A stretch of 64,000 nt of DNA from contig NIVC01001954.1 in the NCBI GenBank assembly GCA_002269645.1, positions 124,001-188,000 of the forward strand, given 5' to 3'. Shown here one piece after another: positions 2,700-52,068 of the stretch. The notes below the pieces were generated by a model. It did not search any database. It was not told the origin of the DNA and saw only the letters and a program-made list of their open reading frames with translations. The translations under genes and the position numbers were made by a program. Positions within the stretch are counted from its first letter, which is position 1, and the number at the start of each line of letters is the position of its first letter. The DNA is from Macrostomum lignano (lineage: Eukaryota).

Positions 2700-5320
2700 C
2701 ACTCTATGCACCATTGACATGAAAGTGTCTAGTGTATGCCAAAAGTTTTTGGGCAAAATTTTAGATATACATCAAGTATGCCAAACTTGGAAATTTGACT
2801 TGTCATATGTGTAAAGAAAGTGGTTTGGTTTAGGTCTCGTTTGAATTTTCTCTAAATGCTAGGCTCGCATGTGTAATGCTGTAATAGGATAAAGAGAGTT
2901 AGAAACTATAGGTGTGGTTGCCAATTATTTTCTCCAAAAATTAACAAGTATAGCAACTGAGTAATTTAAGTTAAGTAGTTAAGTCAAGTAGTTCAATACG
3001 CTAATTAATAATCTGAGCGAGCACTGGAACAATTGACCGCAACTGTAATAACTACTTAGTTAGTTGGGTGCTTTTATTAACAAATTGGATAAACCTAAGA
3101 CTCCAATGCTAAATCACAATACCAATGACTGCTATTATTAAGAAGATGCTAAGCTAAGCGGTGACTCACAACCTAGTAGCCCAAGTAGCCCAAGTTGACT
3201 GTCTAACTGTCCCAGCACAATGCTCTTTCCAATTTGAATATATTTCATATAAACTAAATAATAACAAAATAAGTACATAATGTAAGAATATACTACTACA
3301 ATTACAGAATAAGGGATATATATGGAAAATAATATAAATACTATATAAAACTATAAGAAATTCCAAATAAAGTACAATATTCAAAATCAAGCTATAATTT
3401 CATATGTTTATATATACATTGTAACAAAATAATTGTGTGTCTATTACTCATTTATAAAAACTTGCAATTTCTCAAAGTTCTAGTATCTAAATTCTTTAAA
3501 ATAGCACTATCATATCCAATTTCTATTTTTTTGTTTGCATTTTCATTATCTCTTAACTACTTACATTTTTCTTTGATATGTTCTACTTTTTGTTATAGAA
3601 ACTGTAAGATACTTGCATCTATTTTCAAATTGCTTTTTATACTACCTTTTTATATGTCAAAACAACTTTTTAAGATTTAAACATGCCAAATATATATGCT
3701 AATGAATTATGCAAGGCTAATGCATGCCAAAAAATTATGGCATAGGGCCTATAAGACACTTTCCTGACTATGGTCTATGCACATTGACAAAAACTTGTGT
3801 ACTTGCATGCACATTTCTAGAAAACTTAAGCAACTCTAAAATGTTTATATGCTTTTATTTGTTCGAAAAAACTTGTGATTTTTAAAAAAAATATTGAATA
3901 TTGCATTTGTTAATAAGCCATACAGTAAAACAAAGTATTTGCATTTAAAAGCAAAGCCATTGAGCCTCCATTCTTAAGTGTTACATATATACTAGAAAAT
4001 ATGGGTATACAATAGATGCAAAAATGGTTGGTCTAAAATATCTAGTATATAGAACAATCTGCTAGAAAATTGTGTTACAGCCAATGTATAACATAGCTGT
4101 TAGCTTACAAAACATACAATGTCATAATACAAAAAGAGTCCTACATTGTTGTAACAAAAAGTTTCTTTATTCTATTGTTGCAATCTTTCTAATAATGTCT
4201 AATAACATAATGTCTAGGCCTAGTTATCTACATGTAATAATAAAAAACTTTTTATCCAAAGTTGAAGCATGTTTAAAATAGAAGCAAATTGTTACCAAAA
4301 TAACTTTGTCATAAAATGTCTATTACTAAAATGACCTCCACCTATATATACTATATTTGGCTTTTTTATAATTTGTTATTTTATAATTATTATAATTTGT
4401 TGGTTTTTTGTACAAAGCAGCCAATAAATACTTTATTAAAGATATAAGGCACAATGTATATTGATACTATACTATACTTTTTGTACTAAAAATTCTATTA
4501 AAATGCCACTTTCTTGACTATGGGCTAGGCTTAGACAAAGGCTAAAGTTATAGCAATATAACAAATAATTATATTTTATAAAATTGCTATATTTGCAAGT
4601 ATAATTAAAAGCACTTTATAGTTTATGTATGCTGATTTATTGTACTATATTTATATAAGATATTTCATTTATTACATATATGCACAATCTCCTAAATTTT
4701 ATCTAGCCAATGCAATAAGTTTTCTATGAAAATGCAACCTTGTTACTTGTGTCTGAAGAGCCTTCTTGCAACATATTTGCAAAATTATTTTGTACAACTT
4801 GTGTATACTGATTTATTGTACTATATTTATATAAGATTGCAACAAACGAATAGACAAACATTGTGTCAGCTTTAGTATTAGTAGATATTTAATTTATTAT
4901 ATATGCACAATCTCCTAAATTTTATCTATAGTTTTTTTATGAAAATGCAACCTTGTTATATCAAAAGAGCCTTCTTGGTTAGGCCTATGATAAATAGAAT
5001 AAACAGAATGGTAAGCAATTTATCCATTGACAAATTTATTTATTAACTATAATATTGCTAAAATATGCATCAAATGTTGTCAAGTAAATCTATTGTCTAA
5101 GTTAAATTGTTATAAAATGTCTAGAATCTAGCTAGACTTATCTTTACCACATAAAAAATAGCATTTTTTATATAGCATTTTGTGCTTTATGCTAATTAAT
5201 CCAAACTACTTATTCAGTTCAAACTCACATTTTTCAATATGAATTATTTTGCTATAATTCTATTAATACTTATTTTCAGATGCTACTAGAGGCACAAAGT
5301 TTAACTGTATTCAATATGCA

Positions 5321-8300
5321 ATGATTAGTTCACTGTTGCAGAGGTACAACAGGACCAGGTGGGTTACTAAGTTTTTGTAATCATGTTCAAATATTTGTTG
5401 CATTGTTCTTTAAAGTTTAAACTACTTATTTCAACATGAGTAGCATGGAACATGAGTAGCATTAAAAAACACCTGATATTTAAAGTTCGGCTATAAATCT
5501 AAGGTTATATTATGCAATTACTATTAAATTTTGCTAACCCCTTCTCACACCTGGACTGGCTAATATGACAGGTATTATGCACTATTTGGGGGAAGAGCAA
5601 GTTTGCTACGGCTGGGATGCCTCCGCACCGCTGGCTATGGTGGAAGAGTGCACAATGGCGGATGCATTGGCAACTGGGACAGTAGCGATGATAGCCAGCT
5701 CCGGTCAGTGGAACAGGTCTACCAGGTGAGTGCTGTGCGTTTGTAGTGTGTATTTTATTTTTTCGCTTGTCTGGCGAGCGAAATATTTTATGGTGAAAGC
5801 GTGGCGGCAGTCTGTCTGTTTGTTTTAGTGTCTAATTGTCCTAAAGTCTTAGTTTCCTTTAAAAATGTCTTTCTGTCTGTCTGTTTGTCTGTTTGTCTTA
5901 GTGTCTCAGTATCTGTGTGTCTTAGTGTCTGTCTATGTATTAGTGTCTTTCTGTCTGTTTGTCTTAGTGTCTTAGTGTCTGTCTGTTTGTCTTAGTGCCT
6001 TAGTGTCTGTCTGTCTTAGTGTCTGTGTCTGTCTGTATGTCTGTCTGTGTCTGTCAGCTAGTCTATCTATCTGTAACAACACCCACACACCCCTTATCCC
6101 TGCTCTCCCAAACCCAGCTGAAGTCGCCCACTGAGCACATGCTATTGCGCCCGGACGCCTACATTGGTTCTATCGAGCCGGCCAAACAGCTGGCCTGGAC
6201 ACTGCGGCCGGACAGCTGCGGCGATCGGATGTCCGAGCGTGAGCTGTGCTACTCGCCCGGCCTGTACCGGATCTGTGACGAGATTATTGTGAACGCGGCG
6301 GATAACTGGCAGCGAGATCCGGCCGGCACTAAGGACATTCGCATCGCCGTGGACTCGACGACTGGCACAGTGGAAGTCTGGAACAACGGCCGCGGCGTCC
6401 CAGTTGCTGTACACCCTGACGATCCTGACAGCCGGTACGTGCCTAGCCTGCTATTTGGCCGGCTGTTAACTTCCAGCAATTTCGACGACTCGGTCAAGGC
6501 TACCACGGGTGGGCGGAACGGATTCGGGGCGAAGCTGGCCAACGTGTTTAGCAAGGAGTTCTCTGTGGAGACTCGGAGCGGCCAGACCGGCCTGGAGTTT
6601 CGGCAGGCTTGGAGAGACAATATGACAGTGGCTGGGGAGCCTGCGGTGAGTTGCAGTGTCGCTTGGAGTTATTGTTGCTCATAATTGGGTGATATTCTGT
6701 TTATTGTAGCGTTTTTCAGTGAGATTAAAGTGAGATTTGTGTTTATTGTTGCTGATTTCTGCGAGATTTTGTGTTAACTGCGGCTTATTTCAGTGAGATT
6801 TTGTTTTTGTTTCTTGTAGCTCATTGAAGTGGGATTTTGTGTTTATTGTAGTTTATTTCAGTGAGAGTTTGTGTTTATTGTTGCTGATAACTGGGTGAGA
6901 GTTTGTGTTTATTTTTGCTGATAACTGGGTGAGAGTTTGTGTTTATTGTTGCTGATAACTGGTTGAAAGTTTGTGTTTATTTTTGCTGATAACTAGACGA
7001 GGGTTTGTGTTTATTGCTGCTGATAACTGGATGAGAGTTTGTGTTTATTTTTGCTGATAACTAGGCGAGATTTTGGCAGCTAATTTGTACCGTTATATTA
7101 TACCATAGATTGTCCCAACACCCATCCCACCCTGCTGCAGGTGCAAGCAGCCAACGGCGGTCCAGACTACACCCGAGTGACATTCAAGCCCGACTTGGCC
7201 AGATTCGGGTCGACCAGCCTGGACGCCGACCTTGTCGCATTGATTCAACGCAGAGCCTACGATCTGGCCGCCACCTGCCCGGGAGTGCGCGTGTACTTTA
7301 ACGACCAACAGGTGCCGGTGAGAAGTTTCCGGCACTACTGCGAAATGTACGCGCCGCCTGGCAGCCTGCTGGTTAGCGCCGCCAATCAGCGATGGCTGGT
7401 GGCCGCCTGCGCGTCTGGCGGCGGCGGTGTCGATTCTAATGACGAGATTGTCGATGCTAATTACGGGTTTCGTCACGTGAGCTTTGTTAATGCCATAGCA
7501 ACTCCGGCTGGCGGTCGGCACGTTGAGCTGCTGTGCGACCGGCTGCTGCGGCCGCTGACCGAAGCTGTCGATGCTTCGCTGAGAAATTCCACAGCGCTTG
7601 GAAAGCGGCGGCGGCGGCTTATCGAAGCCTTTCCGGCTGTGAAGCCTTCACAGGTAGCTTAGGCACTTTAGTAATGTGTCCTGTGGCAGTTCTGTCCGTT
7701 GTTTATCCCCCCCCTGGGATCCCTGTCCTTTCCCCTGGGATCTGTCTTCATTTCATCCCCCTGGGATTCCTGTCCATTTTATTCCCCCCTGGGATTCCTG
7801 TCAATTTTATTCCCCCCTGGGATTCCTGTCCATTTTATTCCCCCTGGATTCCTGTCCATTTTATTCCCCCTGGGATTCCTGTCCATTTTATTCACCCACC
7901 CTGGGATTCCTGTCCATTTTATTCCCCCCTGGGATTCCTGTCCATTTTATTCACCCACCCTGGGATTCCTGTCCATTTTATTCCCCCCTGGGATTCCTGT
8001 CCATTTTATTCCCCCTGGATTTCTGTCCATTTTATTCCCCCTGGGATTCCTTTCCATTTTATTCACCCACCCTGGGATTCCTTTCTATTTTATTCACCCA
8101 CCCTGGGATTCCTTTTCATTTTATTCCCCCCCTGGGATTCCTGTCCATTTTATTTCCCCTGGGATTCCTGTCCATTTTATCCCCCCTGGGATTCCTGTCC
8201 ATTTTATCCCCCCCTGGGATTCCTGTCCATTTTATTCCCCCCTGGGATTCCTGTCCATTTTATTCCCCCCTGGGATTCCTGTCCATTTTATTCCCCCTGG

Positions 8301-11300
8301 GATCCCTGTCCTTTCCCCCTGGGATCTGTCTTCATTTCATCCCCCTGGGATTCCTGTTCATTTTATTCCCCCCTGGGATTCCTGTCCATTTTATTCCCCC
8401 CCTGGGATTCCTGTCCATTTTTCCCCCCTGGGATTCCTGTCCATTTCCCCCCCCCCCTGGGATTCCTGTCCATTTTATTCCCCCCTGGGATTCCTGTCCA
8501 TTTTATTTCCCCTAGGATTCCTGTCCATTTTATCCCCCCTGGATTCCTGTCCATTTTATTCTTCCCTGGGATTCCTGTCCATTTTATTCTTCCCTGGGAT
8601 TCCTGTCCATTTTATTCCCCCCTGGGATTCCTGTCCATTTTATTTCCCCTGGGATTCCTGTCCATTTTATCCCCCCTGGGATTCCTGTCCATTTTATTCC
8701 CCCCTGGGATTCCTGTCCATTTTATTCCCCCCTGGGATTCCTGTCCATTTTATTCCCCCTGGGATTCCTGTCCATTTTATCCCCCTGGGATTCCTGTCCA
8801 TTTTATCCCCCTGGGATTCCTGTCCATTTTTCCCCCCTGGGATTCCTGTCCATTTCCCCCCCCCCTGGGATTCCTGTCCATTTTATCCCCCCTGGGATTC
8901 CTCTCCATTTTATCCCCCCCTGGGATTCCTGTCCATTTTATTCCCCCTGGGATCCCTGTCCTTTCCCCCTGGGATCTGTCTTCATTTCATCCCCCTGGGA
9001 TTCCTGTTCATTTTATTCCCCCCTGGGATTCCTGTCCATTTTATTCCCCCCCTGGGATTCCTGTCCATTTTTCCCCCCTGGGATTCCTGTCCATTTTATT
9101 CCCCCCTGGGATTCCTGTCCATTTTATTCCCCCTGGGATTCCTGTCCATTTTATCCCCCTGGGATTCCTGTCCATTTTATCCCCCTGGGATTCCTGTCCA
9201 TTTTATCCCCCTGGGATTCCTGTCCATTTTTCCCCCCTGGGATTCCTGTCCATTTCCCCCCCCCCTGGGATTCCTGTCCATTTTATTCCCCCCTGGGATT
9301 CCTGTCCATATTATTTCTTCTTTCGGGTGACTGTCAATTTTATTCCTACGGAAATGGGATCCCTGATCATTAATCCATCATTATTCCTCTGGGATCCCAG
9401 CCTATTTTATTCCCCCTCTGTCTGTTTCTTCGAGTTAGGGCCCAAATCACAGAGCATCAATGCACAGAGCCATGACAGAAATAACTCGCATTTCTCCCTC
9501 TTCGCAGGTTCGCCGGCGTCTCTGGCTATTCTGCAGCTGCCGAGTTGACAATCCCAGTTTCGAATCGCAGGCGAAGCGCCGGCTCACTTTGCCGGCGTCA
9601 AAATTCGGCGCCGCTGCCGCCGTGCCGGAGGAGCTGATCAAAGGCGGCAGTTTTGTCAGCGTTCTGGCCGACGTTGGCAAGCGGGGCAGCGTCGGTCAGG
9701 CCGTTTGCAGCTCCATGCTTGCCGCTGCTGCTGATTCCGCATCGAATAGAAGTCGCGAGAAATCTTTGGCTGAAGCTTCGGCAGCAGCCTCGGGTGCTAA
9801 GGTGGCCGCCGCTGCTGCTGCCGCTGCTGGCAAACTGCAGCACGCCAATCTAGTAGCTTCAGGCGTCGGGCGCGGCAACGACTGCGTCCTGGTACTGACT
9901 GAGGGCGACTCAGCCAAGGCGCTGGCCGTGGCCGGAGCGGCTGCGGTTCCCGGTGGCCGAGATCGGATCGGCGTGTTGGCACTGCAGGGCAAGCTAATCA
10001 ATGCCAGGGAGGCTGCGCCCACCGCCCTGGCTGAGAGTCGCCTGTTGCAACTGCTGTGCGATGTTGTTGGGCTGCGGGTGAGGCGCCGGCTTTTTGCTTG
10101 GCTGAATTGTTTGCTGGTCTGTAGCTTAAATATGGGGGCGTAAGGCTTGTAGGTATGCGGATTTTATCGGGTTTTAATTTTTTTTCTTGTGTGTGTCTTA
10201 TATCCATGGGATCTGTGTCTTATCCATAGGATCTGTGTCTTATATCCATGGGATCTGTGTCTTATCCATGAGATCTGTGTCCTTTATCCATGGGATCTGT
10301 GTCTTTTATCCATGGTATTTGTGTCCTTTATCCATGGGATCTGTGTCCTTTATCCATGGGATCTGTGTCCTTTATCCATGGGATCTGTGTCCTTTATCCA
10401 TGGGATCTGTGTCCTTTACCCATGGGATCTGTGTCCTTTATCCATGGGATCTGTGTCCTTTACCCATGGGATCTGTGTCCTTTATCCATGGGATCTGTGT
10501 CCTTTATCCATGGGATGTGTGTCCTTTATCCATGGGATCTGTGTCCTTTATCCATGGGATCTGTGTCCTTTATCCATGGGATCTGTGTCCTTTATCCATG
10601 TTATTTGTGTCCTTTATCCATGGGATGTGTGTCCTTTATCCATGGGATCTGTGTCTTTTATTTATGCCCCCTGGGATCTGTGTATTTTATCCATGGGATC
10701 TGTGTCCTTTACCCATGGGATCTGTGTCCTTTATCCATGGGATCTGTGTCCTTTATCCATGGGATCTGTGTCCTTTACCCATGGGATCTGTGTCCTTTAT
10801 CCATGGGATCTGTGTCCTTTATCCATGGGATCTGTGTCCTTTATCCATGGGATCTGTGTCCTTTATCCATGGGATCTGTGTCCTTTACCCATGGGATCTG
10901 TGTCCTTTATCCATGGGATTTGTGTCCTTTATCCATGGGATCTGTGTCCTTTATCCATGTGATCTGTGTCCTTTATCCATGGGATCTGTGTCCTTTATCA
11001 ATGATAGTATGTCACTAATAGCTAAATGATACATTTATCCTGTTTATGTATTACCCAAGGCCTATGCCAACCATGCTACTAACAGTAGCAACATGCTGGA
11101 ACAGTCAATAATTCAATTCCCACGCACACACGCAGCTTGGCAAACGCTACGAGACAGAAGCCGACTTGGCCAGTTTGCACTATCGCCGAATTCTAATCAT
11201 GTCCGATCAGGACACGGACGGCATTCATATCCGAGGCCTAGTATTGAATCTGTTGCACTGCTTCTGGCCTGAACTATTGCTAAGCAGGTGGGATTTTTTG

Positions 11301-14300
11301 CGCCTATTAGTGACGCCGATTGCTAAGGCAACGCCGCCAGCCGACGTGAAAGCGGATAGCGAAGAATTATATTCTATGGACTCGCTGGCCAAGTGGATTA
11401 GCTCTAAGCCAGACTGGCGGCGCTGGTCTTTGAAGTATTACAAAGGCTTAGGCGGTTTCACTGCCGCCGAGGGTAGGCGCTTCTTTGTCCGATTGTTCTC
11501 TGGCCAGTCTGTCCGGCTTGTCCGGCGCGATGTCGGCCAAGGCGGAGAGCAGGACGACGCCGCCCTGGTGCTGGCATTCGGACCCGATGCCGATGCGCGA
11601 AAGGCCTGGCTGGCCGAGGCTGCCGCTGAGTGAGTAGGAGGTCAATTCGGCCTTGTATTGTACTCGTAGAATTCTGGCACCATTGTGTGACTACCAGTGC
11701 CAATTTCGTCTCGATTTCATTATCTGATTGCCACTGTTTATCCTTGAAATCCCACTGTCTATCTTGGAAATCGCAATAATTTTCTTAAAAATCCCAATAT
11801 TTTCCTAGAAATCCTAGTATTTTTCTAGAAATCCCTGTGTTTTCCTAGAAATCTCTGTATTTTCCTAGAAATCCCAGTATTTTCCTAGAAATCCTTGTAT
11901 TTTTCCTAGAAATCCCAGTATTTTTCTAGAAATCCCAGTATTTTCCTAGAAATCTCAGTATTTTACTAGAAATTACAGTGCTTTTTTTCTAGAAATCCCA
12001 GTATTTTCCTAGAAATCCCTGTATTTTCCTAGAAATCTCAGTATTTTTTCTAGAAATTCCAGTATTTTCCTAGAAATCCCAGTATTTTCCTAGAAATTCC
12101 AGTATTTTCCTAGAAATCCCAGTATTTTCCTAGAAATCCTTGTATTTTTCCTAGAAATCCCAGTATTTTCCTAGAAATCCCAGTATTTTCCTAGAAATCT
12201 CAGTATTTTCCTAGAAATTACAGTGCTTTTTTTCTAGAAATCCCAGTATTTTCCTAGAAATCCCAGTATTTTTCCTTAGAAATTGTTGTAGCTTTTGCTA
12301 GAAATCTTTTTTTCCTCCAAACAGTAGTAGTTTTTCCTAGAAATCAGTACATTTTCTTAGAAATTCTAGAAATCGCACAATCTATCTCGCCTTCTATCCC
12401 TGAGAGCCGGCTGTGCATGCGACAAAATCAACGTGTCTTCCCCACAGCGACCATCAGTCCGACGCTGCCCCTCTAAGCTCCTCTCTGGCAGAAGAGCTCA
12501 ACAAATCGTCGCCAAATGCCGAGTTAAGCTGCTCAGATTTCATCCATCGCGAGCTGGTCCAATTCTCTCTAGCCGATAATCGGCGTTCCATACCGGCCTT
12601 AATGGACGGCTTGAAACCGTCGCAGCGGAAGGTATTGTACACCTGTTTCAAGCGCCGCCAACGCCAGCCAATTAGAGTGCCCCAGCTGGCTGGCAGCGTA
12701 GCCGAACTAACAGCCTACAGGCACGGCGATGGAGCCCTATTCAATACTATAGTTGGCATGGCGCAGAATTTCCCCGGCTCTAACAATATCAATTTGTTAG
12801 TGCCTGGCGGTCAGTTCGGCTCCAGATTGCTCGGCGGTAAGGACGCAGCCGCTGCCAGGTATATTTACACCTGCCTGTCTCCGCTGGCTCGGCTTATATT
12901 TCATCCTGACGATGATGCCCTGCTAAACTATCGGATGGAGGATGGCGAACGGGTTGAACCTGTCAGGTTTGTCACCTGTGTGTTAGTGGATGCAGGATCT
13001 TGTGGATGGTTGTCTTTTAATAAGGGTAGACTCTCATTTCTGGTCTAGATGAGGTCACTTCACCTAGGGTCAGGCCATGTTGATACAGGGTCTGACCATA
13101 TTGATACAGGGTCAGGTCATATTGATACAGGGTCAGGCCATATTGATACAGGGTCTGGCCATATTGATACAGGGTCAGGTCATATTGATACAGGGTCTGG
13201 CCATATTGATACAGGGTCAGGTCATATTGATACAGGGTCAGGCCATATTGATACAGGGTCTGGCCATGTTAATACAGGGTCAGGTCATATTGATACAGGG
13301 TCAGGCCATATTGATACAGGGTCTGGCCATGTTAATACAGGGTCAGGTCATATTGATACAGGGTCTGACCATATTGATACAGGGTCTGACCATATTGATA
13401 CAGGGTCTGGCCATATTGATACAGGGTCTGGCCATATTGATACAGGGTCAGGTCATATTGATACAGGGTCAGGCCATATTGATACAGGGTCTGGCCATGT
13501 TAATACAGGGTCAGGTCATATTGATACAGGGTCAGGTCATATTGATACAGGGTCAGGTCATATTGATACAGGGTCAGGCCATATTGATACAGGGTCTGGC
13601 CATGTTAATACAGGGTCAGGTCATATTGATACAGGGTCTGACCATATTGATACAGGGTCTGACCATATTGATACAGGGTCTGGCCATATTGATACAGGGT
13701 CAGGCCATATTGACACAGGGTCTGGCCATGTTAATACAGGGTCAGGTCATATTGATACAGGGTCTGACCATATTGATACAGGGTCTGACCATATTGATAC
13801 AGGGTCTGGCCATATTGATACAGGGTCTGACCATATTGATACAGGGTCTGGCCATATTGATACAGGGTCTGACCATATTGATACAGGGTCAGGTCACATT
13901 GATACAAGGTCAGGCCATGTTAATACAGGGTCAGGTCATATTGATACAAGGTCAGGCCATGTTAATACAGGGTCAGGTCATATTGATACAGGGTCAGGTC
14001 ATATTGATACAGGGTCAGGTCATATTGATACAGGGTCAGGCCATGTTAATACAGGGTCTGGCCATATTGATACAGGGTCAGGCCATATTAATACAGGGTC
14101 AGGCCATGTTAATGCATAGTCAGGTCATATTGATACAGGGTCAGGTCATATTGATACAGGGTCAGGCCATGTTAATACAGGGTCAGGCCATGTTAATACA
14201 GGGTCAGGCCATGTTAATGCAGGGTCAGGTCATATTGATACAAGGTCAGGCCATGTTAATACAGGGTCAGGCCTAGGGTCAGGTCAGGTGGACGCGGGTC

Positions 14301-15886
14301 AGGTCAGTGAGGCACGGGTCAGGTCAGTCAGGACACGGGTCAGGTCAGGTTGACATGGTTCAGGTCAGATCAAGTCTCTCCTTATCGCCCATCCCGCAGC
14401 TACTCGCCAGTGGTGCCCCTAGCGGTGGTGAACGGAGCCGAAGGCATCGGCACCGGCTGGAACACCAGCATTCCCAACCATTCCTTAGCCGACGTGATGG
14501 CGAACCTGCGCCACATGCTTCGCGAGGGCGGCACAGCGGAGCCCCTGCCTATGCTGCCGGCATTTCGCGGTCACACCGGCCGCATCGTTGCCATGCCCGA
14601 CGGTCGCCGGTTCGTTTCCTACGGCCGGCTATTAGCCTACGCTAATACGGGTATATTCGAAATCACCGAACTGCCTGTTCGAGTCTGGAGCGAGCCGTAC
14701 GGCTGCAGCCTGGCCAGCCTGGCCGAGTCTGTCAATAACTACTGCTCGGATTGGCGAGTTCGATTTCTAGTTAAACTGGACCCGTCTCAGCTGGCCAGGG
14801 CTAACCGGATGGGACTGTACCGGTACTTCCGGTTGAGTAGCCGGTTCAGCACCGGATCCATGGTGCTGGCAGATAGCGGAGACAGGATGTGCAGGTCAGT
14901 GCCACGGGCCGATGGGGATGGCACAAAGAGATTAGTGCAATTAGCTAATGGATTTTCTGACTGTCGGCTGGCAACTGTCGGCTGGCAACTGTCGGCTGGC
15001 AACTGTTGGCTGGCAACTGTTAGCTGGCAACTGTCGGCTGGCAAATGTTGACTGGCAAATGTCGGCTGGCAACTGTCGACTGGCAAATATCGGCTGGCAA
15101 CTGTCGGCTGGCAACTGTCGGCTGGCAACTATTAGCTGGCAAATGTTAGCTGGCAACTGTCGGCTGGTAAATGTTGACTGGCAAATGTCGGCTGGAAACT
15201 GTCGACTGGCAATATCGGCTGGCAACTGTCGGCTGGCAACTCTTGGCTGGCAACTCTTGGCTGGCAACTGTCGGCTGGCAACTGTCAGCTGGCAACTGTT
15301 TGCCGCTGAGCTGATTTGCGATCCATTGTTTCTTTGAACATTCCTCAACTTCCCGATCCCCGCCAGGTACCAGACGGTCAGCGACATCATGCGCGACTAC
15401 TTCGACCACCGGCTGGACATGTACAGGCGCCGACTCGATTATCAACGCGCCGAACTCGACGCTTTAGTCCGGTTGCTAAGCAACCAAGCTCGATTCGCTT
15501 TAGACGTAGCCGAAGGTCGATTAAACCTGTCCGGATTTACCGGCCGGTCGGACACAAACCGGCGATTGTCGGCCGCCGGGTTCGAGCCCGATCCTGTCCG
15601 GGCCGCCGCGATTCGAAATGCCGACGATTTCAACGGCGGCGACGAATTCGACTATCTGCTCCGGATGCCCGTGTGGTCGCTGACTCTGGAGCGTCGGCAG
15701 CGTCTGCTGCAGGATCGAGATGAAGCCGCCGGCCGGCTGCGCCAATTGGCCGAGCTGACCCCGGCCAGGGCCTGGCTAGAAGATCTGAACGCTTTGGAGT
15801 CGCGGGCAGCCGCCTGCGCCAAGGAGGAGACCAAGCAGCTGGGCGGCGGCGGCAACGGGGAGGATGGCTGCGAGACCGAGGTTTGA
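5321..15886 (+). CDS. TOP2: Divergent eukaryotic type IIA DNA topoisomerase (Top2 paralog), ~1276 aa, no C-terminal tail, putative N-terminal mitochondrial presequence
   Basis: Exons 5321-5358, 5572-5725, 6118-6645, 7141-7653, 9508-10077, 11136-11629, 12448-12966, 14400-14894, 15367-15886; all GT-AG, phases consistent, 3831 nt in total. Motifs: SVEQVYQ|LKSPTEHMLLRPDAYIGS, DEIIVNAADN, NNGRG, GGRNGFGAKL (GHKL ATPase), FESQAK, TEGDSAK, QGKLINARE, DQDTDG (TOPRIM), YYKGLG, DGLKPSQRK, GQFGSRLLGGKDAAAARYI (catalytic Tyr), NGAEGIGTGW. Exons 3-9 are high confidence; exons 1-2 are lower (exon 1 about 0.55). Confidence 0.92.
5815..6070. repeat. Degenerate (CTGT)n/CTTAGTGT microsatellite, Top2 intron 2
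   Basis: Visible tandem CTGT/GTCT. Confidence 0.85.
6700..7072. repeat. 34-bp minisatellite, Top2 intron 3
   Basis: Unit TTGCTGATAACTGGGTGAGAGTTTGTGTTTATT(T/G). Confidence 0.85.
7710..9312. repeat. ~25-30-bp minisatellite, Top2 intron 4
   Basis: Unit CCCCTGGGATTCCTGTCCATTTTATT with a variable C-run. Confidence 0.95.
10192..11002. repeat. 22-bp minisatellite, Top2 intron 5
   Basis: Unit CCATGGGATCTGTGTCCTTTAT. Confidence 0.95.
11778..12372. repeat. 20-bp minisatellite, Top2 intron 6
   Basis: Unit TTTTCCTAGAAATCCCAGTA. Confidence 0.95.
13062..14368. repeat. 21-bp minisatellite, Top2 intron 7
   Basis: Unit GATACAGGGTCAGGTCATATT, decaying to GGTCA repeats at the 3' end. Confidence 0.95.
14962..15300. 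repeat. 14-bp minisatellite, Top2 intron 8
   Basis: Unit GGCTGGCAACTGTC / GGCTGGCAAATGTC. Confidence 0.92.
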
Positions 15887-15903
15887 GCTGGGACTGACTG
15901 GAG

Positions 15904-16160
15904 ATGGGGTGGGGGATGGGTTGGGGTAGGGGATGGGTTTGGGTAGGTGGATGGGTTGGGGAAGGGGTGGGTTGGGGTAGGGAGATGGGTTGGGGAAGGG
16001 TGGGTTGGGGAAGGGAGATGGGTTGGGGAAGGGGGATGGGTTGGGGTAGGGGTGGGTTGGGGAAGGGGTGGGTTGGGGAAGGGGTGGGTTGGGGTATGGG
16101 GATGGGTTGGGGAAGGGGTGGGTTGGGGTAGGGGTGGGTTGGGGTAGGGGATGGGTTGGG
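15904..16160 (+). repeat. G-rich repeat just after the Top2 stop codon (G-quadruplex potential)
   Basis: Tandem GGGTTGGGG(A/T)AGGGG(A/T)T-like units. Confidence 0.85.
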
Positions 16161-16824
16161 GCAGCAAGGTAATGCACCAGTATTGTTAGCAGTATCAGTA
16201 AATGACGAACTCCCTCTCTCTCTCTCTCTCTCTCTGGCCACCAACTGCAGCAGCAGTCCGACCATCGGCCAGGCCACGGCCAGGCAGTCATCAGGCCACC
16301 GGCGGGGCTCATGCCCACCGTTGTGTCACCGCCCTGCGATCTCGTTAGCGACGGTTTTTAACGACAAAATTGAAATTTAAAAGTCTTGTGATTAACAGTT
16401 CAGATTAAAATACGAGTAAAAATCGTTTTTTAAGCTTGAAAAGTTAGTTATTTTATTGACTGCATTTTCAGTGTTCGCTTATGAAAGTGTAGACGCAATT
16501 GTATTTGAAAAAGGTTTATAATGGATGCTTCCTCCTGTGTTTTGGATGTCTATTTTGCGAAGCACAAAAAGGATTGAATTTAACTGCTTTTTCAAGAAAT
16601 TGCATTTCTACTTGCATGTATTTTCTACTGATTATACCTGGACTTGTAATTTTTATATATCAAGTATAAAGTTGACTACTTTTTGTAACTACGAGTATGT
16701 TGTTTTCTGATCTTCTATTAGCCTGATAGGTAATGTATTCCTAAGAATAGCTAGAATAGAATAGCTAGCTGGTCTCTGATTGCTCGGGATAGAAAAATTG
16801 GGGGAGGCTTCACAAGCGAAAAAT

Positions 16825-17245
16825 TGTATCCAGCTCGTCCCTGATTGGTCCGGATAAAAATAGGAGTAGCCAGCTCGACTCTGATTGGCTGGAACAAAAA
16901 GAATAACCAGCTCGTCTCTGATTGGCTGGAATAAAAAAAGAATAACCAGCTCGTCTTTTATTGGCTGGGATAGAAAAAAAGAGTAACCAGCTCGACTCTT
17001 ATTGGCTGGTATGCAAAAAAGAGTAACCAGCTCGACTATGATTGGTTGGGATAGAAACAGAATAACCAGCTCGTCTCTGACTGTTCCAGTTAGAAAAAAG
17101 ATATAATTTCTTTTCATTGAATTAGAATTTGCCTCTATAAATTTACATTCATGCGGCTAGTATTAACACTTTGATTCTAGCGGCCAGCGATAAAGAGAGC
17201 AAACTGGGATAAATCTCCCTCCTCCTTATAAACCAACCAATCTCT
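16825..17245 (+). promoter_or_regulatory. Putative CTDSPL2 promoter: tandem array of reverse CCAAT boxes plus a TATA-like element
   Basis: About 7 units of 38-40 bp (AACCAGCTCGTCTCTGATTGGCTGG + A-tract), six carrying ATTGG, followed by TATAAA at 17227-17232 and CCAAT near 17237, about 55 nt before the predicted ATG at 17287. Confidence 0.45.
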
Positions 17246-17286
17246 GGAACGTTGGTTCCGCCGTGCAGCCCAGACCAGATCAAAGA

Positions 17287-19347
17287 ATGCTCGGACACGC
17301 AAGGCTGCACAGGATCCAGACTGCTCCGGCCAGGGTTTGCGGCGGCGGCGGCGGTGCCTCCTTCATCACTTCAGCCGCTCAACAGCAGCAGCAGCATCAG
17401 CAGCAGCACCGCCTTCGTCGGATTCGCCGTCCGCCGCCTCAACAGGTTGGCGTTTCATCCTCGCCGTCGTGCGCCGCCAAAGCTGCTGGCACGCCGAAGC
17501 GGACCAGAACTCACCTGCACGGCCGGCTGTTCTCGCCGGCATTCGAAGATCCGACGCCAGCTGCTGTTGACGCGGCTGGCAACGATGACAATAATAATTC
17601 TGGCAGCAGGAAGCAGCAGCTGGCGGCGGAGCGGACAACCAAGCAGCGGCGTCGTGGACGAAACCCGGCTCGCCTGCTGTCCCGGCGTCGCTGCCTCGTG
17701 CATCATTCGGTCGATTTGGCTTCCTTAGCAACAGCCGCTAACATTACTGCGCCAGCACCGGCCGACAAGGAGCTGCCGGCGCCCGACAGCGGCGAATCCT
17801 CGGACGATGGCGGCTCCGAGGAGGAGGCCGAAGAGGAAGAGATTGAAGCCACGGCCGTCGGTGCCAACGACGGAGCCGGCGACGGCGCCGCGCCAATTGC
17901 GGAGCCGACTCAGCCGCCAGTCACTGACGAAAACGCCATGGCTTGTAAAAATCCTCTAGCTAGCAGTGAGCATGAGCAGCTGCTGGCTAGGAAGTACACC
18001 GATCCGGAGGAGTACAGATATTGTGCCGGCACCGCCACTGAGGACTACTTGGATCCGTGAGTGCCCTCAGTTCACCTTGTCTGATCTTCTAGAGACTCGA
18101 CAGGTTTCACTTGCTCTGACTAAACCTGCACATTCCCTGACTAAACCTGCACATTCCCTGACTAAACCTGCACATTCCCTGACTAAACCTGCACATTCCC
18201 TGACTAAACCTGCGCATTCCCTGACTAAACCTGCACATTCCCTAACTAAACCTGCACATTCCCTAACTAAACCTGCACATTCCGTAATCAAACCTGCACA
18301 TTCCCTAATCAAACCTGCACATTTCTTAATCAAACCTACACATTCCCTAATCAAACCTACACATTCCCTAATCAAACCTGCACATTCTGTTTATTTGTGC
18401 AGGTATTTATTTTATCTATGAATTACCCACCACTAAACCAGTGCACCAAGTTCAGAGAACAGGCCCTTTTAATCAACTTACTTTTATACGTTTCATGTAC
18501 AGTGTAGCATTTTAAAATAAATTTTCAGGTTCAGCTTCATCCGCAGCCTCCCGCCGGCGCCGCCGGCCAGCCCCCAGCGCATCCCGGTGCTGCCGAAAAA
18601 GACCCGCCGGACTCCGCGATGCACCCTGGTGCTGGACTTGGATGAGACGCTGGTGCACTCCAGCGTGGACAACTTCCTGCACGGCGCCGATCTCACCTTC
18701 CCTGTCTCATTCGAGTTTGTTGAGTACAAGGTGCACGTGAAGCTGAGGCCCGGCTTTCATGAATTCCTGCACCGAGTCTCCCAGCTGTTCGAGGTGGTGC
18801 TGTTCACTGCCAGCATCCGTGACTATGCGGACGCCCTGCTGGACATCCTGGACCCGGAGAAGCGCTTCATCAGGTGCAGCTGGGCTGTCTGTCTGTCTGC
18901 GTGTCTGTCTGTCTGTCTGTCTGTCTGCCTGCCTTCCTGTCTGTCTGTCTGCCTGTCTGTCTGTCTTTCTGTCTGTCTGTCTGTCTGCCTGCCTGTCTGT
19001 CTGTCTGTCTGCGTGTCTGTCTGTCTGCGTGTCTGTCTGTCTGTCTGCCTGCCTGTCTGTCTGCCTGTCTGTCTGCCTGTCTGTCTGCCTGTCTGTCTGC
19101 CTGCCTGTCTGTCTGTCTGTCTACCTGTCTTAGTGTCTGTCTGTCTGTCTGTCTTAGTGTCTGTCTGTCTATCTTAGTGTCTATCTGTCTGTCTTAGTGT
19201 CTGTCTGTCTGTCTGTCTGTCTGTCTTAGTGTCTGTCTGTCTGTCTTTCTGTTTGTCTTAGTGTCTGTCTGTCTGTCTGTCTTAGTGTCTATCTGTCTGT
19301 CTTAGTGTCTGTCTTAGTGTCTGTCTGTCTGTCTGTCTGTCTGTCTT

Positions 19348-19382
<35 letters not shown>

Positions 19383-19383
19383 T

Positions 19384-19440
<57 letters not shown>

Positions 19441-23759: not shown

Positions 23760-26700
23760 GACTCTCCCAGTCTCCCACTCTCCCACTCCCACTCTCTCTC
23801 CCAGTCTCCCACTCTCCCACTCCCACTCTCTCCCAGTCTCCCAGTCTCCCACTCCCACTCTCTCTCCCAGTCTCCCACTCTCCCACTCCCACTCTCTCCC
23901 AGTCTCCCAGTCTCCCACTCCCACTCTCTCTCCCAGTCTCCCACTCTCCCACTCCCACTCTCTCCCAGTCTCCCACTCTCCCACTCCCACTCTCTCCCAG
24001 TCTCCCAGTCTCCCACTCCCACTCTCTCTCCCAGTCTCCCACTCTCCCACTCCCACTCTCTCCCAGTCTCCCACTCTCCCACTCCCACTCTCTCTCCCAG
24101 TCTCCCACTCTCCCACTCCCACTCTCTCTCCCAGTCTCCCACTCTCCCACTCCCACTCTCTCTCCCAGTCTCCCACTCTCCCACTCCCACTCTCTCCCAG
24201 TCTCCCACTCTCCCACTCCACTCTCTCTCCCAGTCTCCCACTCTCCCACTCCCACTCTCTCTCCCAGTCTCCCACTCTCCCACTCCCACTCTCTCCCAGT
24301 CTCCCACTCTCCCACTCCCACTCTCTCTCCCAGTCTCCCACTCTCCCACTCCCACTCTCTCCCAGTCTCCCAGTCTCCCACTCCCACTCTCTCTCCCAGT
24401 CTCCCACTCTCCCACTCCCACTCTCTCCCAGTCTCCCACTCTCCCACTCCCACTCTCTCTCCCAGTCTCCCACTCTCCCACTCCCACTCTCTCTCCCAGT
24501 CTCCCACTCTCCCACTCCCACTCTCTCCCAGTCTCCCACTCTCCCACTCCCACTCTCTCCCAGTCTCCCACTCTCCCACTCCCACTCTCTCTCCCAGTCT
24601 CCCACTCTCCCACTCCCACTCTCTCCCAGTCTCCCAGTCTCCCACTCCCACTCTCTCTCCAGTCTCCCACTCTCCCACTCCCACTCTCTCCCAGTCTCCC
24701 AGTCTCCCACTCCCACTCTCTCTCCCAGTCTCCCACTCTCCCACTCCCACTCTCTCCCAGTCTCCCAGTCTCCCACTCCCACTCTCTCTCCCAGTCTCCC
24801 ACTCTCCCACTCCCACTCTCTCCCAGTCTCCCAGTCTCCCACTCCCACTCTCTCTCCCAGTCTCCCACTCTCCCACTCCCACTCTCTCCCAGTCTCCCAG
24901 TCTCCCACTCCCACTCTCTCTCCCAGTCTCCCACTCTCCCACTCCCACTCTCTCCCAGTCTCCCAGTCTCCCACTCCCACTCTCTCTCCCAGTCTCCCAC
25001 TCTCCCACTCCCACTCTCTCCCAGTCTCCCAGTCTCCCACTCCCACTCTCTCTCCCAGTCTCCCACTCTCCCACTCCCACTCTCTCCCAGTCTCCCACTC
25101 TCCCACTCCCACTCTCTCCCAGTCTCCCAGTCTCCCACTCCCACTCTCTCTCCCAGTCTCCCACTCTCCCACTCCCACTCTCTCCCAGTCTCCCACTCTC
25201 CCACTCCCACTCTCTCTCCCAGTCTCCCACTCTCCCACTCCCACTCTCTCCCAGTCTCCCACTCTCCCACTCCCACTCTCTCTCCCAGTCTCCCACTCTC
25301 CCACTCCCACTCTCTCCCAGTCTCCCACTCTCCCACTCCCACTCTCTCTCCCAGTCTCCCACTCTCCCACTCCCACTCTCTCTCCCAGTCTCCCACTCTC
25401 CCACTCCCACTCTCTCCCAGTCTCCCACTCTCCCACTCCCACTCTCTCTCCCAGTCTCCCACTCTCCCACTCCCACTCTCTCCCAGTCTCCCAGTCTCCC
25501 ACTCCCACTCTCTCTCCCAGTCTCCCACTCTCCCACTCCCACTCTCTCCCAGTCTCCCACTCTCCCACTCCCACTCTCTCTCCCAGTCTCCCACTCTCCC
25601 ACTCCCACTCTCTCTCCAGTCTCCCACTCTCCCACTCCCACTCTCTCCCAGTCTCCCACTCTCCCACTCCCACTCTCTCCCAGTCTCCCACTCTCCCACT
25701 CCCACTCTCTCTCCCAGTCTCCCACTCTCCCACTCCCACTCTCTCCCAGTCTCCCAGTCTCCCACTCCCACTCTCTCTCCCAGTCTCCCACTCTCCCACT
25801 CCCACTCTCTCCCAGTCTCCCAGTCTCCCACTCCCACTCTCTCTCCCAGTCTCCCACTCTCCCACTCCCACTCTCTCCCAGTCTCCCAGTCTCCCACTCC
25901 CACTCTCTCTCCAGTCTCCCACTCTCCCACTCCCACTCTCTCCCAGTCTCCCACTCTCCCACTCCCACTCTCTCCCAGTCTCCCAGTCTCCCACTCCCAC
26001 TCTCTCTCCCAGTCTCCCACTCTCCCACTCCCACTCTCTCCCAGTCTCCCACTCTCCCACTCCCACTCTCTCTCCCAGTCTCCCACTCTCCCACTCCCAC
26101 TCTCTCCCAGTCTCCCAGTCTCCCACTCCCACTCTCTCTCCCAGTCTCCCACTCTCCCACTCCCACTCTCTCCCAGTCTCCCACTCTCCCACTCCCACTC
26201 TCTCTCCCAGTCTCCCACTCTCCCACTCCCACTCTCTCTCCCAGTCTCCCACTCTCCCACTCCCACTCTCTCCCAGTCTCCCACTCTCCCACTCCCACTC
26301 TCTCTCCCAGTCTCCCACTCTCCCACTCCCACTCTCTCCCAGTCTCCCAGTCTCCCACTCCCACTCTCTCTCCCAGTCTCCCACTCTCCCACTCCCACTC
26401 TCTCCCAGTCTCCCACTCTCCCACTCCCACTCTCTCTCCCAGTCTCCCACTCTCCCACTCCCACTCTCTCTCCCAGTCTCCCACTCTCCCACTCCCACTC
26501 TCTCTCCCAGTCTCCCACTCTCCCACTCCCACTCTCTCCCAGTCTCCCACTCTCCCACTCCCACTCTCTCTCCCAGTCTCCCACTCTCCCACTCCCACTC
26601 TCTCCCAGTCTCCCAGTCTCCCACTCCCACTCTCTCTCCCAGTCTCCCACTCTCCCACTCCCACTCTCTCCCAGTCTCCCAGTCTCCCACTCCCACTCTC

Positions 26701-28945: not shown

Positions 28946-29066
28946 TCCAGAGTCTGACTCATATTGTGAGACATTGAAATAATTCTCAAAATCAATGAAA
29001 ATTATGCAATACGACGCGATGTTGAATTGTCGAGCTGATTGAATTCAGCTGAGCTGCCCACAGCAA

Positions 29067-34624: not shown

Positions 34625-52068
<17,444 letters not shown>

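What the first reader, a model, noticed from the sequence alone, without database searches (positions are those of the whole stretch)
5321..15886. Possible dedicated mitochondrial type IIA topoisomerase in an animal
Seen: the exon carrying the conserved SVEQVYQ start of Top2 (5572-5725) has no in-frame ATG. Joining the upstream 5321-5358 exon (GTGGGT donor, phase 2) gives the leader MISSLLQRYNRTRYYALFGGRASLLRLGCLRTAGYGGRVHNGGCIGNW: 48 residues, 7 Arg, no Asp/Glu, rich in S/L/G. The protein keeps all catalytic residues (GHKL motifs, EGDS, DxDxD, RY) but stops ~30 aa after the last conserved helix (RAWLEDL), so it lacks the long basic C-terminal domain that normally holds the NLS. It is also much more diverged than a normal nuclear Top2 (QGKLINARE for RGKILNVRE, KGLGGFT for KGLGTST). 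Established: mitochondrial presequences are Arg-rich and acid-free; kinetoplastids have a separate mitochondrial Top2 gene, whereas vertebrates reuse the nuclear TOP2 genes. Inference: a tail-less, presequence-bearing Top2 paralog serving mtDNA. I do not know whether this has been described in this lineage. Caveat: exon 1 is AT-rich and unsupported by RNA data, and an internal KRRRR (~7601-7615) could act as an NLS.
Basis: partly seen in the sequence, partly recalled or inferred. Interest (0 to 1): 0.82.

Follow-up and report, generated by a model that had tools for sequence, protein, structure and literature searches.

The report
Tail-less, leader-bearing third flatworm TOP2
The flatworm Macrostomum lignano carries, besides two ordinary nuclear-type topoisomerase II genes, a transcribed, fast-evolving third copy that has lost the nuclear tail and gained an arginine-rich N-terminal leader, which makes it a credible but untested candidate for a dedicated mitochondrial topoisomerase II, something I did not find reported for any animal.

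Summary
The window is Macrostomum lignano DNA. The 1311-aa product is identical to GenBank PAA62286.1 (Mlig004942.g1), a model from an RNA-seq-guided transcriptome, so the 5358/5572 junction and the leader rest on RNA data.

The two "would refute" conditions I could test were not met:
- This is not the only TOP2. Two CTD-bearing TOP2 genes exist, P0170 and Mlig014497.g1.
- Annotated transcripts use the basic leader.

The tail-less gene is the long-branch sister of Mlig014497.g1 (200/200 bootstraps, two shared derived introns). It is therefore a lineage-specific duplicate, not an ancient or transferred gene. It keeps the catalytic residues and is under purifying selection (pN/pS about 0.24).

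The leader has presequence-like composition: 7 Arg, no Asp/Glu in 48 residues. Its amphipathicity is no better than shuffled sequence. No targeting predictor, expression data or localisation data were available, so mitochondrial targeting stays an inference (about 0.45). Rivals are a nuclear or germline paralog and a relaxed, decaying duplicate.

The gene is annotated in public databases but I found no description of it in the searchable literature.

The parts
5288..5320 (+). 5' UTR covered by the annotated transcript. It contains a 2-codon uORF, ATG CAA TGA (5316-5324), that overlaps the start codon.
   Evidence: PAA62286.1 begins with RGTKFNCIQYA, which is the translation of 5288-5320 in frame with the ATG. 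The sequence was read.
5321..5358 (+). Exon 1 CDS (MISSLLQRYNRT + 2 nt). Donor is CAG|gtgggt, phase 2.
   Evidence: It is 100% identical, flanks included, in the two homeologous loci.
5572..5725 (+). Exon 2. It holds the rest of the leader (to 5677) and the start of the conserved Top2 N-terminus (SVEQVYQ, 5705-5725).
   Evidence: No in-frame ATG. In-frame stop at 5561-5563.
5321..5677 (+). Coding sequence of the 48-residue presequence-like leader, interrupted by intron 1 (5359-5571).
   Evidence: R7, K0, D0, E0, net +7. P(no D/E in 48) = 0.0025 given the rest of the protein. RYY|A motif at residues 13-16.
6118..6645 (+). Exon 3: GHKL ATPase domain (DEIIVNAADN 6277-6306, NNGRGVP 6382-6402, GGRNGFGAKL 6508-6537).
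   Evidence: Pfam HATPase_c. Alignment to human TOP2A 6zy5. Coordinates.
7141..7653 (+). Exon 4: transducer domain. GKRRRRL (7600-7620) lies in an insertion at the K-loop.
   Evidence: Pfam DNA_gyraseB. Alignments. The intron after KPSQ (phase 0) coincides with a Branchiostoma TOP2 intron.
9508..10077 (+). Exon 5: QTK loop (here SQAKR, 9565-9579), an Ala-rich insert of about 80 aa, and the Toprim start with TEGDSAK (9898-9918) and LQGKLINAREA (9982-10014).
11136..11629 (+). Exon 6: Toprim DxDxD (SDQDTDG, 11202-11222) and YKGLGGF (11439-11459).
   Evidence: Donor phase 2.
12448..12966 (+). Exon 7: winged-helix domain with the active-site Arg-Tyr (AAARYIYT, 12848-12871).
   Evidence: Pfam DNA_topoisoIV. 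The donor after VEPV (phase 2) is shared with Mlig014497.g1.
14400..14894 (+). Exon 8: tower domain.
   Evidence: The donor after DRMC (phase 2) is shared with Mlig014497.g1.
15367..15880 (+). Exon 9: coiled-coil and C-gate (RAWLEDL, 15767-15787). The donor GAG|gtttga is used in the annotated transcripts and bypasses the TGA at 15884-15886.
16251..16361 (+). Exon 10: the last 36 residues plus the TAA stop.
   Evidence: tblastn of P0001. Identity with PAA62286.1.
17287..19400 (+). Context, not part of the gene: start of the downstream gene Mlig004942.g2, an NIF/FCP1-type phosphatase in the same transcriptional unit. It is the source of the false long "tail" in UniProt models A0A1I8IIA3 and A0A1I8I938.
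   Evidence: Pfam NIF, 2.8e-57.

Best explanation
Window 5288-16361 (+) is Mlig004942.g1 of Macrostomum lignano. It is a 10-exon, 1311-residue eukaryotic type IIA topoisomerase.

Shown:
- It is a lineage-specific duplicate of a canonical, CTD-bearing TOP2 (the Mlig014497.g1 type).
- After duplication it evolved about three to four times faster than its sister.
- It lost the roughly 300-aa Lys-rich C-terminal domain that carries nuclear-localisation and regulatory elements in canonical Top2.
- It replaced the acidic/Lys N-terminus by a 48-residue Arg-rich, acid-free extension encoded by a new 5' exon plus the 5' part of exon 2.
- It keeps the ATP-binding, Toprim metal-binding and Arg-Tyr cleavage residues and the dimer gates.

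Inferred:
- It should still work as an ATP-dependent homodimeric strand-passage enzyme.
- The leader acts as a matrix-targeting presequence, so the enzyme is imported into mitochondria, processed near its N-terminus, and relaxes or decatenates the circular mtDNA.
- The two CTD-bearing paralogs serve the nucleus.

This would parallel how vertebrates made TOP1MT from TOP1.
For: Gene model and RNA support:
- The spliced translation is 100% identical to PAA62286.1.
- The Mlig_3_7 models come from a genome-guided RNA-seq transcriptome (PMC5816591).
- The same leader is present in models at two further loci.

Family membership:
- Pfam finds HATPase_c, DNA_gyraseB, Toprim, TOPRIM_C and DNA_topoisoIV.
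- The protein aligns to human TOP2A residues 23-1220, E = 4e-262, with catalytic residues kept.
- 176 of 202 universally invariant sites are retained.

Paralog status:
- P0170 and P0269 have long Lys-rich CTDs.

Origin:
- The gene is sister to Mlig014497.g1 in 200 of 200 NJ bootstraps.
- The two share two intron positions and phases that are absent from Branchiostoma and Echinococcus TOP2. Chance is 1.5e-4.
- Without the long branch, Mlig014497 sits with P0170 among flatworms.

Constraint:
- pN/pS is 0.23-0.25 against the two other loci, P <= 3e-4.

Leader:
- 7 Arg, no Asp/Glu, net +7. P = 0.0025 for an acid-free 48-mer given the rest of the protein.
- Arg residues are spaced every 2-7 residues rather than clustered.
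- There is an R-3-type RYY|A motif.
- All eight canonical Top2 N-termini examined contain 5-7 acidic residues in the same span.

Tail:
- 67 aa with 5 basic and 10 acidic residues.

Precedent:
- TOP1MT is a faster-evolving, MTS-bearing duplicate of TOP1 (PMC10081982).
- A CTD-less Top2beta was reported in bovine mitochondria (PMC6514783).
Against: - No localisation, import or expression data exist here.
- Dedicated predictors could not be run.
- The helical hydrophobic moment of the leader (0.68 over residues 2-12) is matched by 37% of shuffles. The 18-residue moment is poor. There are 9 Gly in 48 residues.
- GKRRRRL fits a monopartite NLS pattern.
- Fast evolution, Lys depletion with Ala/Arg/Gly gain at unchanged GC3, and changes in otherwise invariant motifs (QTK to QAK, PLRGK to ALQGK) also fit relaxed constraint.
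- Two of the three genomic copies carry 1-nt indels in exon 8 in the public assembly.
- No ortholog from another species and no independent assembled-transcript fragment of the leader was recovered.
- Other animals manage mtDNA without a dedicated Top2 (PMC9638942).
Confidence: 0.45

Rival explanations
1. It is a nuclear, possibly germline- or stage-specific, TOP2 paralog. It would reach chromatin without the CTD, either through the internal KRRRR acting as an NLS or through access during open mitosis or meiosis. The basic N-terminus would be just a disordered extension. The fast evolution would reflect specialisation, or conflict of the kind common in reproduction-related genes.
For: - The KRRRR motif fits a monopartite NLS pattern.
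- Amphipathicity of the leader is not above shuffles.
- The branch is very long.
- Germline-enriched genes of M. lignano are often Macrostomum-specific (PMC5816591).
- No ortholog was found outside M. lignano.
Against: - KRRRR lies at the K-loop position inside the folded transducer domain.
- The entire CTD is lost while two CTD-bearing paralogs are retained.
- An acid-free, evenly Arg-spaced 48-mer at the extreme N-terminus is unlike all eight canonical Top2 N-termini examined.
- No germline expression evidence was found.
Confidence: 0.28
2. It is a redundant duplicate drifting under relaxed constraint. It is transcribed but has little or no function. The leader and the lost tail would be by-products of a truncated duplication that captured a chance 5' exon.
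For: - 26 of 202 invariant sites have changed, including QTK to QAK and PLRGK to ALQGK.
- The Pfam Toprim score is below the curated cut-off (22.4 against 23.1).
- Amino-acid composition has shifted towards residues with GC-rich codons while GC3 is unchanged.
- Two of three loci have frameshifting indels in exon 8, and their models are truncated.
- The gene was not found in the stored parts of the expression tables.
Against: - The ORF is an intact 1311 codons across 10 exons.
- pN/pS is about 0.24, with P <= 3e-4 against neutrality.
- 87% of invariant sites and every catalytic residue are kept despite about 50% overall divergence from the sister gene.
- The indels may be long-read assembly errors.
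Confidence: 0.15
3. The functional product is a read-through fusion with the downstream NIF/FCP1 phosphatase, as in UniProt A0A1I8I938. On this reading the protein is not tail-less.
For: - A donor at 16345|gt and an acceptor at 17268|17269 join the two ORFs in frame in this window.
- Both genes belong to one transcriptional unit, Mlig004942.
Against: - The transcriptome-based annotation splits the unit into g1 and g2, and g1 ends at the TAA at 16359-16361.
- The other fused model, P0002, needs frame changes.
- About 900 nt of AT-rich sequence and a CCAAT-repeat array lie between the two genes.
Confidence: 0.05

Closest known systems
Canonical metazoan TOP2, specifically M. lignano Mlig014497.g1 (PAA94319.1)
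   Same: - Same five-domain architecture and the same catalytic residues.
- Sister genes: 200/200 bootstraps, two shared derived introns, and shared motifs such as AAARYI.TCLSPLAR, VWSEPY, NNYCSD and KL.HAN.
   Different: - Only 49.6% identical over the core.
- No ~300-aa Lys-rich CTD.
- A new Arg-rich, acid-free N-terminal leader from a new 5' exon.
- An Ala-rich insert of about 80 aa before Toprim.
- Lys 2.6% against 9%.
Vertebrate TOP1MT, the mitochondria-dedicated duplicate of TOP1
   Same: - A nuclear topoisomerase gene is duplicated and one copy acquires an N-terminal targeting sequence.
- That copy evolves faster than its nuclear sister (PMC10081982).
   Different: - TOP1MT is type IB, not type IIA. 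It arose at the base of vertebrates and its localisation is proven experimentally.
- Here the targeting is only inferred and the gene is known from one species.
Kinetoplastid mitochondrial topoisomerase II (TOP2mt)
   Same: - A separate nuclear gene encodes a type IIA enzyme that acts on mtDNA (PMC6514783).
- From my own memory, not checked here: these enzymes are also short and lack a long CTD.
   Different: - Independent origin. The flatworm gene is nested within flatworm TOP2.
- Kinetoplastid sequences were not included in my tree.
- The kinetoplast DNA network creates a special need for decatenation that no flatworm mtDNA is known to have.
Mammalian Top2alpha/Top2beta reported in mitochondria
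   Same: - Type IIA activity has been proposed for animal mtDNA.
- A C-terminally truncated Top2beta was found in bovine mitochondria (PMC6514783).
   Different: [quoted passage not shown]
- Its presence is disputed: human mitochondria were reported to hold only TOP1MT and TOP3A (PMC9638942).
- Here there is a separate gene with its own leader.

Membership tests
Eukaryotic type IIA DNA topoisomerase (Top2) | N-terminal GHKL ATPase domain with the catalytic Glu/Asn box and the Gly-rich ATP lid | tested here: met
   Pfam HATPase_c, 9.7e-9. DEIIVNAADN, NNGRGVP and GGRNGFGAKL align to human TOP2A E87/N91, N120 and the 161-168 lid.
Eukaryotic type IIA DNA topoisomerase (Top2) | Transducer domain with the QTK-loop lysine | tested here: met
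   Pfam DNA_gyraseB. The motif reads SQAKR: Gln and Lys are kept and Thr is replaced by Ala.
Eukaryotic type IIA DNA topoisomerase (Top2) | Toprim domain with the catalytic Glu (EGDSA) and the DxDxD metal site | tested here: met
   TEGDSAK and DQDTDG are present. The Pfam Toprim score of 22.4 is just under the cut-off of 23.1. The adjacent PLRGK is changed to ALQGK.
Eukaryotic type IIA DNA topoisomerase (Top2) | Winged-helix domain with the active-site Arg-Tyr, plus tower and coiled-coil C-gate, all fused in one polypeptide with the B-type half | tested here: met
   Pfam DNA_topoisoIV, 1.2e-90, covering positions 1-431 of 432. AAARYIYT is present. The alignment to human TOP2A runs to residue 1220.
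Eukaryotic type IIA DNA topoisomerase (Top2) | Strand-passage and ATPase activity | not testable with these tools
   Requires recombinant protein and relaxation or decatenation assays.
Canonical nuclear metazoan TOP2 | Long charged C-terminal domain with NLS and regulatory sites | tested here: not met
   There are 67 residues after RAWLEDL, with 5 basic and 10 acidic. P0170 and P0269 have about 300 aa of Lys-rich CTD.
Mitochondrial matrix proteins with a cleavable presequence | N-terminal 15-60 residues rich in Arg and hydroxylated or aliphatic residues, and devoid of acidic residues | tested here: met
   R7, K0, D0, E0, net +7, first acidic residue at 49. P = 0.0025.
Mitochondrial matrix proteins with a cleavable presequence | Ability to form a positively charged amphipathic helix | tested here: inconclusive
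   The maximum 11-residue moment is 0.68 at residues 2-12, but 37% of shuffles reach it. The 18-residue moment is 0.26. The leader has 9 Gly.
Mitochondrial matrix proteins with a cleavable presequence | Processing-peptidase cleavage motif (Arg at -2 or -3) | tested here: inconclusive
   There is one R-3-type match, RYY|A at residues 13-16, and several trivial R-2 matches. Pattern matching alone has low specificity.
Mitochondrial matrix proteins with a cleavable presequence | Positive call by trained predictors, and import shown experimentally | not testable with these tools
   TargetP, MitoFates and DeepLoc are not available offline. No localisation data exist.
Protist mitochondrial Top2 (kinetoplastid TOP2mt type), membership by orthology | Common descent with those genes | tested here: not met
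   The nearest relative is an M. lignano nuclear-type TOP2, by bootstrap support and shared introns. The resemblance would therefore be convergent.

The most novel reading that the evidence does not exclude
An animal has evolved a dedicated, presequence-bearing mitochondrial type IIA topoisomerase. It would have done so by duplicating a nuclear TOP2, discarding the nuclear C-terminal domain and recruiting a new 5' exon as a targeting signal. This would be a type II counterpart of vertebrate TOP1MT, convergent with kinetoplastid TOP2mt, in a flatworm where transgenesis and RNAi make it directly testable.
Probability: 0.4. Interest if true: 0.75.

Novelty: new variant of a known kind. Interest (0 to 1): 0.6.

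Why it matters
Whether animal mitochondria use a type II topoisomerase at all is disputed. Some groups find Top2alpha and Top2beta in mitochondria. Others find only TOP1MT and TOP3A. No targeting signal has ever been identified on an animal Top2 (PMC6514783, PMC9638942).

A separate animal gene whose only obvious differences from its nuclear sister are a presequence-like leader and the loss of the nuclear tail would be a natural experiment. It could show that a Top2 can be committed to mtDNA in an animal, and what such an enzyme must keep or can lose.

M. lignano supports transgenesis and RNAi, so the question is answerable in this species.

If the protein turns out to be nuclear, the locus is still of interest. 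It documents how a tail-less Top2 is tolerated, and it shows rapid TOP2 family expansion, from one gene to three types, with near-complete intron turnover in one flatworm lineage.

Tried and rejected
1. Spliced-leader start codon.
- The M. lignano SL ends in ATG (PMC8629364).
- Joined at the 5572 acceptor, that ATG is out of frame and stops after 38 codons.
- No nearby AG gives the right frame. Rejected.

2. A hidden long basic tail.
- UniProt A0A1I8IIA3 (1501 aa) and A0A1I8I938 (1747 aa) extend into window 17262-18054.
- That sequence is exon 1 of the downstream NIF phosphatase gene, Mlig004942.g2.
- P0002 also needs frame changes. Rejected as chimeric models. An in-frame read-through splice is kept as a minor rival.

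3. Ancient or horizontally acquired Top2.
- The first NJ tree placed the gene at the base of Metazoa, and identities were flat at 39-44% to all eukaryotes.
- Finding Mlig014497.g1 resolved this as long-branch attraction.

4. Only TOP2 in the genome. Rejected.

5. Pseudogene. Not supported.

6. Orthologs or independent transcript fragments.
- The N-terminal 196-aa search returned only GHKL fragments at 58% identity or less, none covering the leader.
- The exhaustive exon-8 search found only M. lignano copies above background.
- Nothing was found, which is not evidence of absence.

7. Expression class (neoblast, germline or other).
- The supplementary tables of PMC5173321, PMC5816591 and PMC5946080 are truncated in the library.
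- They contained neither TOP2 nor the Mlig ids.

8. Literature.
- No paper links Macrostomum and TOP2.
- Moreira et al. 2022, on TOPIIA evolution in animals, is not held. It might mention invertebrate duplicates.

9. Technical limit. A single exon was used instead.

Full report
**What is there**

- The window is genomic DNA of the free-living flatworm Macrostomum lignano. A nine-exon translation built from the sequence hits UniProt A0A1I8ICT6, "DNA topoisomerase 2", of M. lignano at 97% identity over its full length. The next hits are canonical TOP2s at only about 40%.
- Pfam finds the complete Top2 architecture: HATPase_c, DNA_gyraseB, Toprim, TOPRIM_C and DNA_topoisoIV.
- All splice sites are GT-AG. 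Exons are 55-64% GC and sit in AT-rich or minisatellite-filled non-coding DNA.

**Checking the 5' end**

- Exon 5572-5725 has an in-frame TAA at 5561-5563 and no in-frame ATG. An upstream exon is therefore needed.
- The proposed 5321-5358 exon joins in phase 2 and yields the quoted 48-residue leader.
- GenBank proteins of the Mlig_3_7 annotation fall in the same 90% cluster.
- PAA62286.1 (BOX15_Mlig004942g1) is 100% identical to my translation from the Met onward. It carries 11 further in-frame residues that are the translation of window 5288-5320.
- Two further loci, Mlig000796.g2 and Mlig009085.g2, give models that start with the same MISSLLQRYNRTRYYALFGG.
- That annotation is a genome-guided RNA-seq transcriptome in which transcriptional units are split into genes at trans-splicing events (PMC5816591). 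I did not see the reads myself.
- I also tested whether the spliced leader could supply the start codon. The M. lignano SL ends in ATG (PMC8629364). At the 5572 acceptor that ATG is out of frame, so it cannot.
- The next in-frame Met is residue 72, inside the conserved N-terminus. M1 is therefore the only sensible start.

**Checking the 3' end**

A donor at 15880 joins an acceptor at 16251 and adds 36 residues before a TAA at 16359-16361.
- The tail after RAWLEDL is 67 residues, with 5 basic and 10 acidic. The conclusion that the long basic CTD is missing stands.
- Two UniProt models show long C-terminal extensions. These map to window 17262-18054, the first exon of the next gene, an NIF/FCP1-type phosphatase that starts at ATG 17287.
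- That gene is Mlig004942.g2, in the same transcriptional unit. One fused model needs frame changes. The other uses an in-frame read-through splice. I treat both as chimeric and keep the read-through as a low-probability rival.

**Is it the only TOP2?**

- No. A search with a trematode TOP2 recovers M. lignano A0A1I8HWP8 (P0170, 1491 aa). It is 60% identical to the query and has a long Lys-rich CTD.
- An exhaustive search with exon 8 then revealed a third type, PAA94319.1 (Mlig014497.g1, P0269, 1536 aa). It also has a long Lys-rich CTD.

**Origin**

- The gene first looked equidistant from all eukaryotic Top2s (39-44% identity) and attached at the base of Metazoa in NJ trees.
- With Mlig014497.g1 included, the two genes pair in 200 of 200 bootstraps. 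The tail-less gene sits on a branch about three to four times longer.
- They share two intron positions with identical phase: after VEPV, and after the Cys-Leu-Lys / Met-Cys that precedes RY. Neither is present in Branchiostoma or Echinococcus TOP2. The chance of this is about 1.5e-4.
- They also share derived motifs.
- Without the long branch, Mlig014497 groups with P0170 among flatworms, in 137 and 134 of 200 bootstraps.
- The most economical history is two successive duplications in the macrostomid lineage. The younger copy lost the CTD and gained the leader.
- An ancient or horizontally acquired origin is rejected. Any likeness to protist mitochondrial Top2 is convergent.

**Is it functional?**

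- Aligned to human TOP2A (6zy5), the ATP-binding Glu/Asn box, the ATP lid, the QTK lysine, the Toprim Glu and DxDxD, and the Arg-Tyr pair are all kept.
- 176 of 202 positions invariant in 33 canonical Top2s are retained.
- Against the two other genomic copies, pN/pS is 0.23-0.25, significantly below neutrality.

Several signs point the other way:
- QTK reads QAK and PLRGK reads ALQGK.
- Lys falls from 9% to 2.6%, and Ala, Arg and Gly rise, although GC3 is unchanged.
- The two other copies have 1-nt indels in exon 8 in the public long-read assembly.

**The leader**

- Its composition is what a matrix presequence looks like: 7 Arg spaced every 2-7 residues, no Lys, no Asp or Glu until residue 49, and Ser/Leu/Ala/Gly-rich. 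The chance of an acid-free 48-mer is 0.0025 given the rest of the protein.
- All eight canonical Top2 N-termini examined have 5-7 acidic residues in the same span.
- An R-3-type motif, RYY|A, is present at residues 13-16.
- The helical hydrophobic moment is not better than shuffled versions (p = 0.37), and Gly is abundant. The amphipathic-helix criterion is therefore inconclusive.
- The internal KRRRR lies in an insertion at the K-loop of the transducer domain. This weakens but does not remove the NLS caveat.

**Comparison with what is known**

- The review literature states that no targeting sequence has been found on animal Top2 and that mitochondrial and nuclear forms appear identical. It also reports a CTD-less Top2beta in bovine mitochondria (PMC6514783).
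- A later study finds only TOP1MT and TOP3A in human mitochondria (PMC9638942).
- TOP1MT is the closest analogy: a duplicated nuclear topoisomerase with an N-terminal targeting sequence and faster evolution (PMC10081982).
- I found no paper on Macrostomum TOP2.
- One relevant paper on TOPIIA evolution in animals is not held, so the novelty claim is limited to what I could search.

**Verdict**

The paralog status, the RNA-supported leader, the missing CTD and an intact, constrained enzyme are shown. Mitochondrial targeting is a reasonable inference that I put at about 0.45.
- The rivals are a nuclear or germline paralog (about 0.28), a relaxed duplicate (about 0.15) and a read-through fusion (about 0.05).
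- The gene is already annotated but, as far as I could find, uncharacterised. It is a new variant of a known enzyme family.

Noticed in passing
window 6861-7075, 7757-9315, 10192-11003, 11741-12364, 13066-14273, 14960-15299, 15905-16161: Seven consecutive introns of the TOP2 gene (introns 3-9) are each largely filled by a different minisatellite, with periods of 14-34 bp and up to 57 copies. The rest of the window is similarly packed with arrays, so most long "ORFs" listed there are repeat artefacts.
   Followed up: partly
window 16819-17101: There are about 7 tandem copies of a 39-bp unit containing CCAGC..GATTGGCTGG, a CCAAT box on the opposite strand. They lie about 170 bp upstream of the first exon of the downstream phosphatase gene. 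This may be a promoter element inside what is annotated as one transcriptional unit.
   Followed up: no
window 16345/16346 donor and 17268/17269 acceptor; gene from 17287: The downstream gene Mlig004942.g2 is an NIF/FCP1-homology phosphatase (Pfam NIF, 2.8e-57) in the same transcriptional unit. An in-frame read-through splice would fuse TOP2 to it, as in UniProt A0A1I8I938. The 17269 acceptor is probably the SL trans-splice site.
   Followed up: partly
window 5316-5324: A two-codon uORF, ATG CAA TGA, overlaps the TOP2 start codon (ATG at 5321-5323) within the annotated 5' UTR.
   Followed up: no
L004 about 15339-15873 and L005 about 16188-16721 (exon 8 of the two homeologous loci): Both other genomic copies carry 1-nt indels in exon 8 that truncate their GenBank models (1073 and 1017 aa). 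These are either long-read assembly errors or real inactivation of two of the three copies.
   Followed up: partly
L003 3001-13507 (Mlig014497.g1) compared with L001 and L002: None of the 7 introns of the CTD-bearing sister gene coincides with any of the 26 core introns of Branchiostoma TOP2 or the 11 of Echinococcus TOP2. Those two share 5 with each other. This implies near-complete intron turnover in the Macrostomum TOP2 genes.
   Followed up: partly
whole CDS, window 5321-16361: Lys is 2.6% in this paralog against 9% in both nuclear-type paralogs, while Arg, Ala and Gly are raised. GC3 is the same (0.67 against 0.69), so the shift is at the protein level and not from the local base composition.
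   Followed up: partly
window 23762-28948: A 5.2-kb C-rich array of about 158 copies of a 32-bp unit (CTCTCCCAGTCTCCCACTCTCCCACTCCCACT) gives a GC skew near -0.88.
   Followed up: no
window 48477-49244 (+) and 40496-41494 (-): One ORF fragment carries mariner-type transposase domains (Transposase_1, DDE_3). Another ORF carries ankyrin repeats. The DM9/UFD1 hits at 54012-55613 lie inside a 33-bp tandem array and are probably spurious.
   Followed up: no
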